This document shows, in pieces, positions 7,528 to 33,189 of a stretch of DNA of 64,000 bases. Positions within the stretch are counted from its first letter, which is position 1. Every line of letters starts with the position of its first letter. This DNA is from Pavona decussata (taxonomy: Eukaryota). Where the stretch lies: NCBI GenBank assembly GCA_977016875.1, contig CDRNST010000104.1:3348001-3412000 (forward strand), in the 5' to 3' direction. A program made the position numbers and the translations under genes. A model generated the notes under the pieces. It was not told the DNA's origin. It searched no databases and worked only from the letters and a program-made list of their open reading frames with translations.

Positions 7528-8104
7528 ATGATGAGGACTACCGGTTTATTGGTAGTTTTCACGTTATTTGTCATCCTTCATCAAACGCCTGCAGTTCCTG
7601 TGGCATCCTCTTATAGATTAGAAAATGAAAATGTTATGGAAGTAACGGAAGCCAAGGACAAGAGCGACGAGGCCAGTGACGAGGAGAAGGAGGAAGATGA
7701 CAATGATAAGGAGGAGGAGAAAAACGAAGACACAGACGAAGAGAAAGAAGGAAAAGAGGATGAAGAGAAAAAGGACGATGAAGAATCTAAGGATGTTGAA
7801 GAAAATAAGGAGGATGAGGAGAGAAAAGACGACGAGGAGGCCAAGGATGACGAAGAGAAAAAGGACGATGAAGAAAGCAAGGACGATAAGGAGGAGGACG
7901 GGCAGGAACCTGACTTAAATGAGGAGCAAAATGATGAGTCTTCTGGCGAGGAAAGTGTTGATCTTGACTCTGATCACCTTGTACTTCAAGGAAGTGGTAG
8001 CGGCAAAATCAAAGGAGTCGTGATTGAAGACTCAGAGAAAGAGAAGGATAAGCCCGAGAAGCGATCAGTAGTTGATCAGAAGAAGCCTTCAAAGGCCACG
8101 CAAG
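7528..8104 (+). CDS. Leader exon: signal peptide plus Asp/Glu/Lys-rich prodomain (192 codons + 1 nt); candidate common 5' exon of the cassette array
   Basis: MMRTTGLLVVFTLFVILHQTPA is a hydrophobic signal, followed by DDEEKK-type acidic repeats. Ends CAA G|GTAATA (phase 1). Confidence 0.85.
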
Positions 8105-9115
8105 GTAATAATTCCCCTTGTTCTCAATAATAATTGCTTAAGCTTAGGTATAAAAATGGTTTCTCGGGCATCACAGGACGAGCACACATCTTAAGGCTTA
8201 CGAGCAATCAAAAGCTGTTTATATTATCAAGATATGTTGGATTCCTAACAAAGTTCACTTTAAAGGAAGTATATATAGTTGATTTTTATAATTTACTGTT
8301 TAAGAGGAAATATGCCATTATAAAGACTAAGTAATTAATATTTTAAAATAGCTGTCGGGCAATGTCTTGATTGTTATGGCTTCTCATCTTTAAGAGACAA
8401 AACAAAGTAAATCTCAATCCTACGCTTAAGCCTAAAATATCTAAATATGGTTATTAAAAAAATTACGAGCTTTAGTAAAAGTAAAAGGTGTGGAAATAAA
8501 TTTCCCCTTTGTTAATTGAAGCGTGAAAAGATTACAGGTTAACGGCCACCTGCTCCGATGAACAAGAGATGAACTTATCTATATTTTGTTCATCGTGCTC
8601 CAGTTTTCAGGTCAATCAAAAAAAATCTAACCTGATTACGGCAATCACACCTTTTCCCCGCTATGCAATCATATGGTTAATGTAACAGTACTTCGAACTT
8701 CTTCAGGTTTTTCCTCCAAGTGACTAAAAGGTGCAAATCAACAGCCCACTCGATGGGCAAAATTCTAAAAAGCACAGCACAAGTTCCTTAATTCCATGAC
8801 AGCTTAAATTGACGAACAAACAATTTAAGCTTTGAAAATAACAGTTAAATAAATAACAACTTGTCAAAATAATGTTTTCTTAGCCTGGTTATATAGTGAC
8901 TACACCGACAATTTATTAATATCAAAATTAAGTAAGATAGTAGGTTAACCTGGATAATATTCCCCAATAGTGAACAACCACACTGCCAATCCACCTTTTC
9001 CAAGAAAGGAAACTTTCCAAACAATAATTTTAAGGGATAAAGCCTTGCATGAACTAACGTTGTAAATTTGCATGTTATATTTTTGCATGCTGCATGATAC
9101 TACTTGCATGAACAG

Positions 9116-29538: not shown

Positions 29539-32500
29539 CTAAACGACATTGGGGTGTTGGACACGGCTACGGCCTTGGTGGATTTGGCGGCTTTGGTGGA
29601 TGTGGTGGATTTGGCGGGTGTGGTTGTTGTGGCTGCGCAGAAGGTACCATGTGCTCAAACTGATGTGGTGGTTTCGGTCCTCCAGTTGGCTGCAGACGCG
29701 GTGGTGGTTGCGGCCTTTCATTACCGTGCACGTTTGGCGCTTGCGTGAACAATCCTTGCTGTGAATGCTGCAAAGAGAAGCCACCGAAAGGAGTGTGCCA
29801 GTGGCCATGCATGTGGCCCTGCTGCTGCCAGTGTAAACCTCCCAAGTTTAAGTTCAAGCTCCTGGAACCCAAACCTGTGTGTCATGGTCATCATCACTGT
29901 CATCGCAGATCACGCAGCCACAAGAAATCGAGTGAGTCATTCTCATTTCAGATGATTGATTACTGTAGTGTATGTTAAAGTTAACCCATGGACATCTTAC
30001 TCAGAGTCCTAATAAGGAAACGGGAGAACGCACGAGGCAAAAAAAAAACAAATTTTCGACTTCGGCGAGAATGGAGCCAATGACCTCGGGATGAGAGCAA
30101 GTCGTGGGTGATAATGATAGTAGCTGCGGCAAATGTAAAAGTGAAGGGTGCAAATTATTATTTTTTATTTTAACATACACTACCGATTTAATTCTCTGAA
30201 CTATCATTTGTGTCATTGATGCAATTTTGGGTCTAGTTAAATTGACTTAGTCCTTTATCGCAATAGCAATCAGCTGCCTAAGCTTCGAACAAATGCTGGA
30301 CGTAAAATAAACACCGTCATTTCCAATAAGATCAGAAGGCGATTGTTCCGAATTACACCTTGCTGTACTGTCGTTATATTTCCCGATCTGGCCCAGCGTT
30401 TATCCGGGGTCCGGCGTTTGTTTGAGAGAATTAACGCTGTGATGCTTTTGAAATTCCTTTCATTCCAGTTACAGATTTGCAACAAGTTTAGCAAAAACCG
30501 ACGGCTGTGATTTAACTCCAGTCTTACCATGCGCAACAAGTATATAAGACCTTCTTAAGTGTATGAATTACGACTACATTTTTTTAGCTTGTGGTTTGAC
30601 TAATTTTGGTGGTATTATTTCGTCTTGTTACACAGAGCAAGGAGGTGCTGTCAAACGCCCTATGATGAAAGCTTTCAAGGAAAGTTCGTTTCCAGCTGAC
30701 TATCCTCAATTCCTATCGGGTTCATTCCAAGGTGGCAACGTTCCATTCAATGGACCACAATTTCCAGGTGGGCCTGTTCCATTCGGTGGATGCTTTTTCC
30801 CCAGAGCTAACTCTCCATTCATTGGCCGTCCATTTCCAGTTGGCCCTTCTCTGTTTCCAGCCGGAATGCCTCCACTTGAAGCCCGCTCCTTACCAATGAG
30901 TGGCCCTATATTCAGTGAACGTTTGTTCCCAGGTGTCAAATTTAAATCTGATGACAGTTCGCTCCCAGGCGCTAATTCTCCGTTTGATAGCCGTTCGTTC
31001 CCAACTGGACCACCCTCCCCTTTCCTTGGACCTTTGTTTCCGGGAAGCCCATCTCCATTCAGTGCAGCTTTATTTCCAGGTGGTAATTCTCCATTCCCGA
31101 GAGCAGCTTATCCTACATTTACCTTTCCTACTGTGAACAGTTTTCCCTTGAAGCCTCAAGCTATTCTTCACGTTCCTGCGAAGAAGTCAATACCTTCGGG
31201 TGCTCAGGTATGTCAGCCAGGATGTTCTATTCTGTGTCAATCAACGTAAAACATAAAATCTAATTACTCACGATAATTGGACGTTTGGCCTTTATTTCTA
31301 CCATCATCACAAAACTGAATGAAACGAAAGTAAAGGGAAATATTGTACATTCCACAAGCTTAAAAGAAAGCAGCGCAAGATCGGAACGTCGGTTATGAAC
31401 AAGACCTATCAACAGAATTAATAGAGAAACGACATTGAATTGAGAAGTTGCGCAAAATACCAATCTAATGTTATTGCTCTTTGTACGATAATTTGAGAGC
31501 GTCTTAGATTCCGGATTCCACGCTTTGGATACCAGATTCCAATGGCTCGGTTCCGATTTTCCACGTCGGTTGATTCCGGGTTCCAAAAGAGGCTGGATTC
31601 TAGATGTTAGGATCTAGCTTCAAGCGCTTTGTATTGCATTTTTCCAGATATTACAGGAAGAGACTTCAATAGTGGTTCTTGGTATTGAAAGGGAGTTGTG
31701 CCAAAAATTGAATGTGTTTTCAAGGATGTGTGCAGGTTTTTGCTTTCTTCAATAATAATTAGAAATTCATTCAGAAATAAAACGAGACTTTGGCTTATCT
31801 GTGAAAGAGGGATGCGCTTTTTTCTATCTACGTATGTGTAAGCGGTACCCTTTCGGTAGTCTGGTAAATGAAAAGGTAAGGAAACTTTCTGGCGGAGCTT
31901 CCCCGTATGAAACCTCTCACCCGGGATAATTGCCAACATACCGCTTTAACTGTTTCAAAAGGCTACAAAAAGGAATCCACAAACCTTGCACTTTTCTGGA
32001 CTTTCCTTTTCTTTCTTAGACCGACTCACGTAGACAAAATTCAGTTAGCTCGTGCCGATTCATAATTGAGATAGAGAAAGGAAGAGATAAAGCGTCGTGA
32101 AGTTTGAATTCCCTTAGATCTATAAACAGAAACTTTTGTTCTCTTACATTTATTCTAAAATATGACTCGATAATATTTCCCACTTCATACACAGAATAAT
32201 AACGTACCTTTCCCTCCAGCCTTTTGCTTTCCCTTGTGCTTCCCCATAGTGTCAATTCATCCTTTATTTAATCACGATCTGATTTAAGGCATAAAAATGC
32301 TTTCGGGGTAGTTTTATCTATAAGGTAAACACTACAAGATAAAAATGTATTCAAATGGTTCACTAATAGTGATAGGTAGGAGTAAGAGAATAAAAACACA
32401 AAATGAAAACAATTGTCTACTAAATATTAAAACCTTACGACATTTATAAACGGTGTAATGTTGAAGAGCAGGCGGCAGATCTGATAGACCGTAATGATAT

Positions 32501-33189
32501 ATCGCTCGAGATTTCAAATGGACAGCCCGGCTGAATATAGTCATTGTATGAGCAAAAGCTGGCTAAAAGAAAGCAGGAGCTGACAGAACTGCACCACAAA
32601 AAGTCGTCGACAGATCAGCTATTACGACGTAATAAAAATAGTAATAGTAATAATAATGCGTGTTGTTAAGTATAATAATTATCCTCGCGACGCGGTTGTG
32701 TCATCCAACACAACAGTTTTCACACCGGATATGTCGATATTTCCCAGGGCGGGTAAAACGAGAGAAACGTGTGTGAGGTCGCCAGCTCGGAACAGCGGCT
32801 TTCGGGAAGCTACTGAAAGGGTGAAGAGCCATTGTTACAAGAAGTGGATTCCAGCAATCTTGACTCTGACTCCAATCGTTGTATTCTGGATTCCAAGAGC
32901 CGGATACCAGATTCTATAACCCTGGATTCCGGAAGGTAGATTACCCTACATGGTGGAAGTATGAAATTAGACCCGACCGGACGTCTACTTATTAATTTAT
33001 TTATTTATTAATTTATGCTTGATTGTATTTAAGGTTTCTATAAGAGTACAAACTGGCGCTGACTCGGTAAAAAGAACCCCAACTGATGAAATGGAGAAGC
33101 AAGAAGAAGAAAACGGAGATCAAGAACAAAAACCAGAACAGGAACAAGGACAAGAAGCAGAAAAAGAAGAAGAGGAAAAGCAAGAATGA
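29539..33189 (+). pseudogene. Cassette 5' (duplicate of cassette 5), disabled: exons 29539-29931, 30636-31207, 33034-33189
   Basis: TGC changed to TGA at 29661-29663; also FPC to LPC, KPL to KLL and GCGC to GCRR at conserved positions. Confidence 0.8.

What the first reader, a model, noticed from the sequence alone, without database searches (positions are those of the whole stretch)
7528..33189. Candidate shared-leader / variable-3'-cassette locus generating a repertoire of secreted Cys-rich proteins
Seen: only one signal-peptide + prodomain exon (7528-8104, ending in a phase-1 G) precedes eight homologous cassettes (acceptors at 9116, 13972, 16007, 18178, 20153, 25575, 27688, 29539). Every cassette opens in phase 1, and the leader's G completes a sense codon (V, A, E, E, A, E...). 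KR/RR follows within 1-4 residues. Each cassette has its own stop and poly(A) signal. Leader plus cassette closes in frame each time (371, 328, 407, 367, 563, 403 aa). Only ~310 bp separate the AATAAA of cassette 2 (15694) from the acceptor of cassette 3 (16006), ~660 bp for 3 to 4 and ~550-640 bp for 4 to 5, and I find no signal-peptide exon in these gaps. Known: common 5' exons joined to alternative 3' exon sets occur in Drosophila lola and mod(mdg4); clustered protocadherins and UGT1 use the mirror arrangement. Inference: one promoter and secretion leader serve mutually exclusive mature-peptide cassettes by alternative 3' splicing and polyadenylation. I know of no such system described for cnidarian secreted structural proteins.
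Basis: partly seen in the sequence, partly recalled or inferred. Interest (0 to 1): 0.92.

Follow-up and report, generated by a model that had tools for sequence, protein, structure and literature searches.

The report
One leader exon, many protein cassettes
In this coral genome one exon encoding a secretion signal and an acidic pro-piece is spliced to any of several downstream exon sets, each encoding a different cysteine-rich protein; the same layout occurs in other corals and in a sea anemone.

Summary

- **Layout.** One leader exon (CDS 7528-8104, phase-1 donor) precedes eight homologous Cys-rich cassettes. Each opens at a phase-1 acceptor followed at once by KR or RR.
- **Copy number.** The 602-Mb genome holds exactly one leader and these eight domain copies.
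- **RNA evidence.** Contigs from two studies carry the last 28 nt of the leader fused to the acceptors of cassettes 2, 3 and 4. That 28-mer is unique in the genome.
- **Within cassettes.** Each Cys exon splices only to its own downstream exons: a stop, a 3'UTR intron, then a poly(A) hexamer. No contig chains cassettes and none shows a local first exon.
- **Other cassettes.** Cassette 1 is linked to the leader by full-length transcripts of a related coral. Cassette 6 is expressed. Leader junctions for cassettes 5 and 6 were not tested. Cassettes 7 and 8 each carry one nonsense codon.
- **Other species.** NCBI models in Pocillopora and Nematostella share one start and have different 3' ends. Oculina shows three products entering from upstream with different ends. 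RefSeq names isoforms X2-X5 in Acropora, Montipora and Nematostella.
- **Precedent.** Hydra NSP2/nb012 and nematogalectin do this with two alternatives, so the kind is known. I found no paper on this family.

The scan's other notes concern this same stretch, not other DNA.

The parts
7469..8104 (+). Leader exon. CDS runs from ATG 7528. It encodes a signal peptide and a 170-aa acidic (74 D+E, no Cys) pro-region, and ends in a phase-1 donor AAG|gt. It is the only copy in the genome.
   Evidence: The 5' limit of about 7469 comes from aligning orthologous full-length RNA contigs L010-L012.
9116..10716 (+). Cassette 1. Cys exon 9116-9466 (phase 1-1). Exon 10529-10716 encodes GPSKR plus a Gly/Tyr-rich tail and the stop. 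The 3'UTR matches near 12231-12266. The isoform is 371 aa.
   Evidence: The leader junction is inferred from orthologous transcripts and proteins P0053 and P0034. It was not tested in this species.
13972..15872 (+). Cassette 2. Exons 13972-14370, 14854-14992 (stop ends at 14987) and 15467 to about 15872. Hexamers lie at 15694, 15717 and 15779. The isoform is 369 aa.
   Evidence: joints, and a loose end before 13970 in X2 that reads the leader tail. Also.
16007..17530 (+). Cassette 3. Exons 16007-16510, 16761-16917 (stop ends at 16903) and 17300 to about 17530. AATAAA lies at 17514. The isoform is 407 aa.
   Evidence: the loose end before 16005 in X1 reads the leader tail, and the joints are listed there. 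Also.
18178..19590 (+). Cassette 4. Exons 18178-18561, 18923-19085 (stop ends at 19065) and 19337 to about 19590. The isoform is 367 aa.
   Evidence: loose ends before 18176 in X1 and X2 read the leader tail, and the joints are listed there. Also.
20153..21860 (+). Cassette 5. Cys exon 20153-20545 (phase 1-1). The second exon starts at 21252 (or 21258) and encodes GPVKR plus a roughly 200-aa Pro/Phe/Gly-rich tail.
   Evidence: This is a sequence model only. The leader junction and the 3' end were not tested.
25575..26066 (+). Cassette 6 Cys exon. It is an intact duplicate of cassette 3 and is expressed.
   Evidence: One search lists the differences from cassette 3. The same differences, including the 12-nt deletion, appear in RNA contigs laid on cassette 3 (X7 record 20 and X2 record 15).
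27688..28068 (+). Cassette 7 Cys exon. It duplicates cassette 4 and carries an in-frame TGA at 27810-27812.
29539..29931 (+). Cassette 8 Cys exon. It duplicates cassette 5 and carries an in-frame TGA at 29661-29663.
15699..33405 (+). Tandem segmental duplication. The unit 15699-25280 is repeated at 25280-33405 at 92-95% identity. The second copy lacks 22296-24523.

Best explanation
This is one transcription unit with one promoter and one first exon.

**How it works**
- The first exon encodes the signal peptide and an acidic pro-region. Its single phase-1 donor at 8104 is cis-spliced to one of several downstream phase-1 acceptors, 1 to 21 kb away.
- Each acceptor opens a self-contained 3' module. 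The module holds a Cys-rich domain exon that starts with a dibasic cleavage site, and an exon with a second dibasic site, an aromatic/Pro/Gly-rich tail and the stop. A 3'UTR intron and its own poly(A) site follow.
- The choice of cassette is therefore alternative 3' splice-site use coupled to alternative polyadenylation. Transcripts meant for distal cassettes must read through the proximal poly(A) sites.
- The shared exon ends just before KR/RR. Furin-type processing would then remove everything the isoforms share, leaving mature proteins encoded entirely by the chosen cassette.

**Shown**
- Single leader, and junctions to cassettes 2, 3 and 4.
- Cassette-internal splicing, with no chaining in the runs examined.
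- Deep conservation of the layout.

**Inferred**
- Cis rather than trans splicing.
- Use of cassettes 1, 5 and 6 in this species.
- KR cleavage.
- Regulated cassette choice.
- A structural role, possibly in the cnidocyst, for the products.
For: - **Junctions.**: contigs of RNA runs X1 and X2 (two studies) end, just before 13972, 16007 and 18178, in 24-28 letters identical to window 8075-8102, followed by AG.
- **Assembly logic.** 28+2 letters equal k-1 of the assembler (k = 31 is my assumption). That is what a graph branch inside a shared exon would give.
- **Uniqueness.**: the 28-mer occurs once in the window and once in the 602-Mb genome at up to 3 mismatches. The leader exon has no second copy.
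- **Whole family here.**: all eight domain copies of the genome lie in this window.
- **Clean splicing.**: GT..AG joints run only within cassettes. Frames close at 369, 407 and 367 aa.
- **Transcript ends.** Contig coverage stops near hexamers at 17514 and 19566/19596.
- **Pocillopora.**: two NCBI products both start at L008:2499 and end at 9890 (407 aa) and 13979 (408 aa). They skip 2 and 4 cassettes respectively.
- **Nematostella.**: three products of LOC116617360 start at L009:10001 and end at 12634, 15107 and 23501. There is one leader, five domain copies, and the same phase-1 donor/acceptor with a dibasic site.
- **Oculina.**: three products enter from upstream and end at different places.
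- **RefSeq names.**: isoforms X2-X5 in Acropora muricata, A. palmata, a third Acropora record (species name cut off in the tool output), Montipora foliosa, M. capricornis and Nematostella.
- **Cassette 1 type.**: full-length Logan RNA contigs of a related coral join the leader to the cassette-1 type.
- **Age.**: cassette types 1, 2 and 3/4 group across coral genera (support 91/84, 100/99, 99/97). The array predates those splits and each type is conserved.
Against: - The reads tool gave assembled contigs, not raw reads. Isoform proportions, 5' ends and exact poly(A) sites are therefore unknown.
- Only 24-28 nt of leader are attached to each cassette contig. No single contig of this species spans the whole leader plus a cassette.
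- In run X1 the cassette-2 contig runs unspliced about 180 nt upstream of acceptor 13972 (record 1). This could be intron retention or an internal start.
- NCBI models the type-5-like cassette without the leader in Pocillopora (P0012) and Oculina (P0015).
- KR processing and secretion are inferred from sequence alone.
Confidence: 0.85

Rival explanations
1. Trans-splicing, as in Drosophila mod(mdg4). The leader exon would be transcribed as its own short RNA and joined in trans to cassette pre-mRNAs made from internal promoters.
For: -, X1 record 1: a cassette-2 contig continues unspliced about 180 nt upstream of its acceptor, as an independently started pre-mRNA would.
- The gaps between one cassette's 3' end and the next acceptor are very short (about 135-310 nt). 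Proximal poly(A) sites must otherwise be read through.
Against: - Leader and all cassettes lie on one strand and in one order in five species. Trans-splicing would not require that.
- Low-depth RNA contigs cover inter-cassette DNA at 17775-18057, which fits a continuous primary transcript.
- Spliced-leader trans-splicing is known in hydrozoans, not anthozoans (own knowledge).
Confidence: 0.05
2. A tandem array of ordinary paralogous genes. Each would have its own promoter and small first exon, and the leader-cassette junctions would be rare read-through chimeras of the first gene.
For: - Cassettes have their own stops, UTR introns and poly(A) hexamers.
- NCBI calls some cassettes as separate leaderless genes (P0012, P0015; L009:16927-18107).
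- There is an unspliced upstream extension in X1.
Against: - No joint from any local exon into acceptors 16007 or 18178 in four runs. The only partner seen is the leader.
- There is no other signal-peptide exon in the locus or leader copy in the genome.
- Without the leader the Cys domains have no start codon or signal peptide. The leaderless NCBI models start at internal Met or lack a signal peptide.
- The junction contigs have substantial depth (25-128) in X1 and X2.
Confidence: 0.06
3. One long gene whose symmetric phase 1-1 Cys exons are chained into a multi-domain polyprotein that is cut at the KR sites.
For: - All Cys exons are phase 1-1 and flanked by dibasic sites.
- One non-RefSeq Desmophyllum model (P0030) chains two domains.
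Against: - Every Cys-exon donor seen (14370, 16510, 18561) joins its own tail exon, which contains a stop. No inter-cassette joint was seen.
- Every family hit in 1.84 billion cluster representatives has one matched stretch; the only multi-stretch row, P0070 (807 aa, four stretches, E = 6e-5), is a marginal match.
Confidence: 0.02

Closest known systems
Hydra NSP2 (nb012a/nb012b) and Hydra nematogalectin A/B
   Same: - A cnidarian secreted protein gene in which a shared 5' exon is joined to one of several tandemly duplicated, homologous 3' exon sets.
- PMC6134521 states this for nb012a/b: one 5' exon is shared, all other exons come from different DNA regions, and a tandem duplication of 3' exons is the likely origin.
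- Nematogalectin is a case of nematocyte-specific alternative splicing, known to me from the title of Hwang et al. 2010 as cited in PMC4195985. I could not read that paper.
   Different: - Those have two alternatives. Here there are eight cassettes (six intact) and five in Nematostella.
- The protein family is unrelated (no Pfam hit).
- The lineage is Hexacorallia, not Hydrozoa.
- The shared exon here ends just before a dibasic site, so the mature products probably share no residues.
Drosophila lola and mod(mdg4)
   Same: Common 5' exons are joined to a long array of mutually exclusive 3' terminal exon sets, each with its own stop and poly(A) site. This gives many isoforms from one promoter region (own knowledge).
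   Different: - Those are nuclear BTB proteins whose common part is a functional domain kept in the product.
- mod(mdg4), and partly lola, use trans-splicing, including cassettes on the opposite strand.
- Here the shared part is a secretion leader and pro-piece, and all cassettes are co-linear on one strand.
Clustered protocadherins and UGT1A
   Same: A tandem array of homologous alternative exons shares a constant part within one locus (own knowledge).
   Different: It is the mirror image. There the variable 5' exons each have their own promoter and splice to constant 3' exons. Here one promoter and 5' exon serves variable 3' modules with their own poly(A) sites.
Keratin-associated-protein-like and other Cys-rich cnidarian structural proteins (minicollagen CRD)
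   Same: - High Cys (19-35%), Gly and Pro content, a signal peptide and a pro-piece ending in KR.
- One Actinia member is auto-named 'keratin-associated protein 5-5-like'.
   Different: - No Pfam family, and the ESM Atlas hit is only 0.76.
- The minicollagen CRD pattern is absent.
- The resemblance is in composition only.

Membership tests
Common-5'-exon / alternative-3'-cassette gene (lola, Hydra NSP2 type) | A single shared 5' exon with one donor serves the whole array. | tested here: met
   There is one leader in the window and in the genome. There are eight domain copies and no other locus.
Common-5'-exon / alternative-3'-cassette gene (lola, Hydra NSP2 type) | Transcripts join the shared donor to two or more different downstream acceptors. 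| tested here: met
   The leader tail is fused to 13972, 16007 and 18178 in RNA contigs of two studies.
Common-5'-exon / alternative-3'-cassette gene (lola, Hydra NSP2 type) | Each cassette has its own stop and 3' end, and cassettes are mutually exclusive. | tested here: met
   Stops lie at 14987, 16903 and 19065. Contigs end near poly(A) hexamers. There are no inter-cassette joints. This holds for cassettes 2-4 only.
Common-5'-exon / alternative-3'-cassette gene (lola, Hydra NSP2 type) | Joining is in cis from one primary transcript, as opposed to trans-splicing. | not testable with these tools
   Only assembled contigs were available. Co-linearity in five species and low-depth inter-cassette RNA favour cis.
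Tandem array of independent paralogous genes | Each unit has its own first exon with a start codon and signal peptide. | tested here: not met
   No such exon appears in the ORF and donor scan. No local joint enters acceptors 16007 or 18178.
Chained multi-domain polyprotein gene | Domain exons are spliced to one another in a single mRNA. | tested here: not met
   No such joints were seen. Every family hit among the cluster representatives has one domain; the only multi-stretch row is the marginal P0070 at E = 6e-5.
Known protein families (Pfam; minicollagen CRD) | A significant profile match, or the CX3CX3CX3CX3CC pattern. | tested here: not met
   No Pfam family reached E <= 1 for the leader or five cassettes. 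The CRD pattern is absent. The AlphaFold model was unusable at pLDDT 42.8.

The most novel reading that the evidence does not exclude
The locus may be an ancient 'one promoter, one secretion leader, many mature proteins' device, conserved since sea anemones and stony corals diverged.

- Cassette choice would be regulated by cell type or stage, for example by the type of stinging organelle. The family appears restricted to Hexacorallia, the only group with spirocysts.
- The only shared coding sequence is discarded by KR cleavage. The locus would then work like a eukaryotic operon for a whole protein family, and new members would arise simply by duplicating leaderless cassettes.
Probability: 0.35. 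Interest if true: 0.75.

Novelty: new member of a known kind. Interest (0 to 1): 0.6.

Why it matters
- **An entire family at one locus.** The whole gene family of this genome (eight domain copies) hangs on a single promoter and signal-peptide exon. Family expansion happens by duplicating leaderless 3' modules, and one such duplication is visible here with two copies already broken.
- **A source of annotation error.** This explains why automated annotation repeatedly produces leaderless 'genes' for these cassettes.
- **A tractable model.** In Nematostella it offers a way to study how splice-site choice and poly(A)-site read-through are coordinated across up to about 20 kb in an early-branching animal.
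- **A test of isoform choice.** If cassette choice is cell-type specific, it would be a simple non-neuronal case of isoform choice from an array.

Tried and rejected
- **Pfam** on the leader and five cassettes gave nothing.
- **ESM Atlas** gave only a 0.76 compositional hit.
- **AlphaFold** on the domain alignment gave pLDDT 42.8, which is unusable, so I ran no fold search.
- **Protein searches with single exons** mostly returned ORF calls on genomic contigs that read through introns. They said nothing about splicing. Only the search with the 264-aa P0012 reached the full-length RefSeq isoforms.
- **Docking/selector RNA pairing.** I looked for pairing between the first 600 nt of the leader intron and the 400 nt before each distal acceptor. 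RNAduplex energies were within about 2 SD of shuffled controls, and long global duplexes are a poor test. No claim is made.
- **Bacterial promoter/terminator scan** is irrelevant to a eukaryote.
- **In-frame ATG at 25475** upstream of cassette 6 reads through the acceptor. I rejected it as a start because cassette 3 has no equivalent and it lies in the pyrimidine tract.
- **Literature searches** for the gene (LOC116617360, the RefSeq names, keratin-associated + cnidocyte, spirocyte markers) found no description.
- **Hwang et al. 2010** could not be read.
- **Joined models.** I sent no joined leader+cassette protein to any search tool. Spliced models were searched exon by exon by reference. Frame continuity was computed per exon in scripts.
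Full report
**1. What is in the sequence**

The window is AT-rich eukaryotic DNA from a stony coral. The RNA and DNA runs that hold it are labelled with one organism, alongside coral metatranscriptomes.

The ORF 7528-8104 encodes 192 residues: a signal peptide followed by a very acidic region with no cysteine (74 D+E). It ends in one extra G before gtaata.

Eight homologous Cys-rich exons lie downstream on the same strand. Each follows a pyrimidine tract and AG, at 9116, 13972, 16007, 18178, 20153, 25575, 27688 and 29539. With the leader's G each opens a sense codon, and KR or RR follows within 1-4 residues.

A self-comparison shows that 15699-25280 (cassettes 3-5) is tandemly duplicated at 25280-33405 (cassettes 6-8) at 92-95% identity. 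Cassette 6 is intact. Cassettes 7 and 8 each carry a single in-frame TGA.

I scanned 5-34 kb for ATG + hydrophobic segment + phase-1 donor. Only the leader came out as a credible signal-peptide exon.

**2. Only one leader in the whole genome**

- The leader exon has no second copy in the 602-Mb assembly. The other hits are 70% matches to its low-complexity acidic part.
- Its last 28 nt (window 8075-8102) occur once, allowing 3 mismatches.
- The Cys domain has eight matches in the genome, all in this window.
- So six intact cassettes have exactly one possible signal-peptide exon.

**3. RNA evidence**

I laid contigs of four RNA runs from four studies on 13900-19899.

*Leader junctions.* Contigs of X2 before 13970 and 18176, and of X1 before 16005 and 18176, carry 24-28 unaligned letters identical to the leader's end. 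The AG that follows is shared by the leader end and the intron end. If the assembler used k = 31 (my assumption), 28+2 letters equal k-1, which is what a graph gives when a shared exon branches into several continuations. The contig at 16005 has cassette 3's base at 16008, not cassette 6's, so this junction belongs to cassette 3.

*Splicing inside cassettes.* All joints are GT..AG and stay within one cassette:

| Cassette | Joints |
|---|---|
| 2 | 14370>14854, 14992>15467 |
| 3 | 16510>16761, 16917>17300 |
| 4 | 18561>18923, 19085>19337 |

The Cys exons are 399, 504 and 384 nt, so each is phase 1-1. The stop lies in the second exon, 5-20 nt before a 3'UTR intron. The isoforms close at 369, 407 and 367 aa.

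*What was not seen.* No joint links one cassette to the next. No joint enters an acceptor from a nearby exon.

*Transcript ends.* Coverage stops near poly(A) hexamers: AATAAA at 17514, and 19566/19596.

*Cassette 6 is expressed.* The 'other letters' and the 12-nt deletion listed under cassette 3 are exactly the differences between cassettes 3 and 6. Cassette 6 is therefore transcribed and spliced.

*Primary transcript.* Low-depth contigs over introns and inter-cassette DNA (for example 17775-18057) fit a continuous primary transcript.

**4. Caveats**

- These are assembled contigs, not reads, so 5' ends, abundances and poly(A) sites are not measured.
- In X1 the cassette-2 contig continues unspliced about 180 nt upstream of 13972. 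This is either intron retention or an internal start.
- Junctions to cassettes 1, 5 and 6 were not examined in this species because only one reads call was allowed.

**5. Other species**

- **Related coral, cassette 1 type.** Full-length Logan RNA contigs encode leader plus the cassette-1 type (361 aa). They align to the window's leader, cassette 1, its tail exon at about 10680 and a UTR at about 12240. From this, cassette 1 is 9116-9466 plus 10529-10716, giving 371 aa.
- **Pocillopora verrucosa.** Two NCBI products start at the same base, L008:2499. They end after the third (407 aa) and fifth (408 aa) cassettes, skipping those between.
- **Nematostella vectensis.** LOC116617360 has three recorded products with one start and ends 2.6, 5.1 and 13.5 kb downstream. 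The locus has one leader and five domain copies. The phase-1 donor, phase-1 acceptor and dibasic site are the same as in the coral.
- **Oculina patagonica.** Three products enter from upstream and end at different places.
- **RefSeq names.** Members are named isoform X2-X5 in Acropora muricata, A. palmata, a third Acropora record (species name cut off in the tool output), Montipora foliosa, M. capricornis and Nematostella.
- **An ENA coral assembly** shows the same order of leader and cassettes.
- **Tree of the 80-residue core.** Cassettes group by type across genera: type 1 (91/84), type 2 (100/99) and type 3/4 (99/97). The array is older than those genera, and each type is conserved.

**6. 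The proteins**

- The Cys-domain exon is 116-167 residues long, with 19-35% Cys. It has an invariant core around WPC-M/L-WPCCC and a C-terminal half rich in Pro, Lys and His.
- It is followed by a second dibasic site and a cassette-specific tail rich in Tyr, Pro, Gly and Phe.
- There is no Pfam family, no convincing Atlas relative and no usable structure model.
- Only 22 cluster representatives among 1.84 billion match; the family members among them each have one domain (the last row, P0070, is a marginal four-stretch match at E = 6e-5). All named members are hexacorals.
- A secreted, disulfide-cross-linked structural role is an inference from composition and from the signal + pro-piece + KR design. 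That design is typical of cnidocyst proteins (own knowledge). A link to spirocysts is speculation.

**7. Mechanism**

- *Shown.* One donor is used with at least three acceptors. The 3' modules are self-contained and mutually exclusive.
- *Inferred.* Splicing is in cis from one read-through transcript. Choice results from competition between proximal cleavage/polyadenylation and splicing to a distal acceptor. The leader is removed at KR, so the mature proteins share no residues.
- I found no docking/selector pairing.

**8. Comparison with what is known**

The architecture is a known kind.
- Drosophila lola and mod(mdg4) have it (own knowledge).
- Within Cnidaria, Hydra NSP2/nb012a,b has one shared 5' exon and duplicated 3' exon sets (PMC6134521; PMC2687796 gives the earlier, unresolved view).
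- Nematogalectin A/B is a further Hydra case of nematocyte-specific alternative splicing (Hwang et al. 2010, cited in PMC4195985, not readable here).

What is new here:
- The size of the array.
- The whole family sits at one locus.
- The layout is conserved from anemone to corals.
- The shared exon encodes only removable sequence.

RefSeq already lists the isoforms, but I found no paper that describes them.

**9. Verdict**

This is a new member of a known kind, of moderate to high interest.

Earlier scan notes on the same stretch agree with what I tested: the conserved domain, the phase 1-1 exons and the three-cassette duplication. The suggested chaining of exons was not seen.

Noticed in passing
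window 41819-42484 (+): A 221-aa ORF with a hydrophobic N-terminal segment. It ends in a degenerate relative of the C-terminal half of the Cys domain (TPPKFKMKPLKSK). It may be a distant paralogue that carries its own start within the same ORF.
   Followed up: partly
window 44450-45560: A GC-rich block (GC 0.60, GC skew +0.57) made of imperfect tandem repeats at 75-81% identity.
   Followed up: no
window 35455-35858 and 39288-39682: A pair of 404-bp inverted repeats, 96% identical and about 3.4 kb apart. They may be the ends of a transposon.
   Followed up: no
window 49654-50875: A tandem repeat with a unit of about 400 bp, 83-85% identical.
   Followed up: no
window 24831-25058, within 24524-25280 (duplicated at 32655-33405): An ORF with a signal-like start and an acidic Glu/Gln-rich tail, followed by AATAAA at 25253. 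It could be the last exon of cassettes 5 and 8, or a small separate gene.
   Followed up: no
window about 16034-16120: All four RNA runs carry a variant of the Gly/Cys-rich start of cassette 3/6 that is absent from the assembly. This suggests length polymorphism in that low-complexity stretch.
   Followed up: partly
window 14992, 16917, 19085: Cassettes 2, 3 and 4 each have a 3'UTR intron that starts 5-20 nt after the stop codon. The feature is conserved, and its purpose is unknown.
   Followed up: partly
window 17511; G000:C84:1461041-1461070 (L014): One RNA contig of X7 continues from 17511 into sequence found on another contig of the genome. This is just before AATAAA at 17514. It is probably a repeat or an assembly-graph jump.
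   Followed up: partly
window 19462-19587: A low-depth RNA contig shows a 124-nt skip with CAA inserted. This matches the second duplication copy (28962-28966), so the region after the broken cassette 7 is also transcribed.
   Followed up: partly
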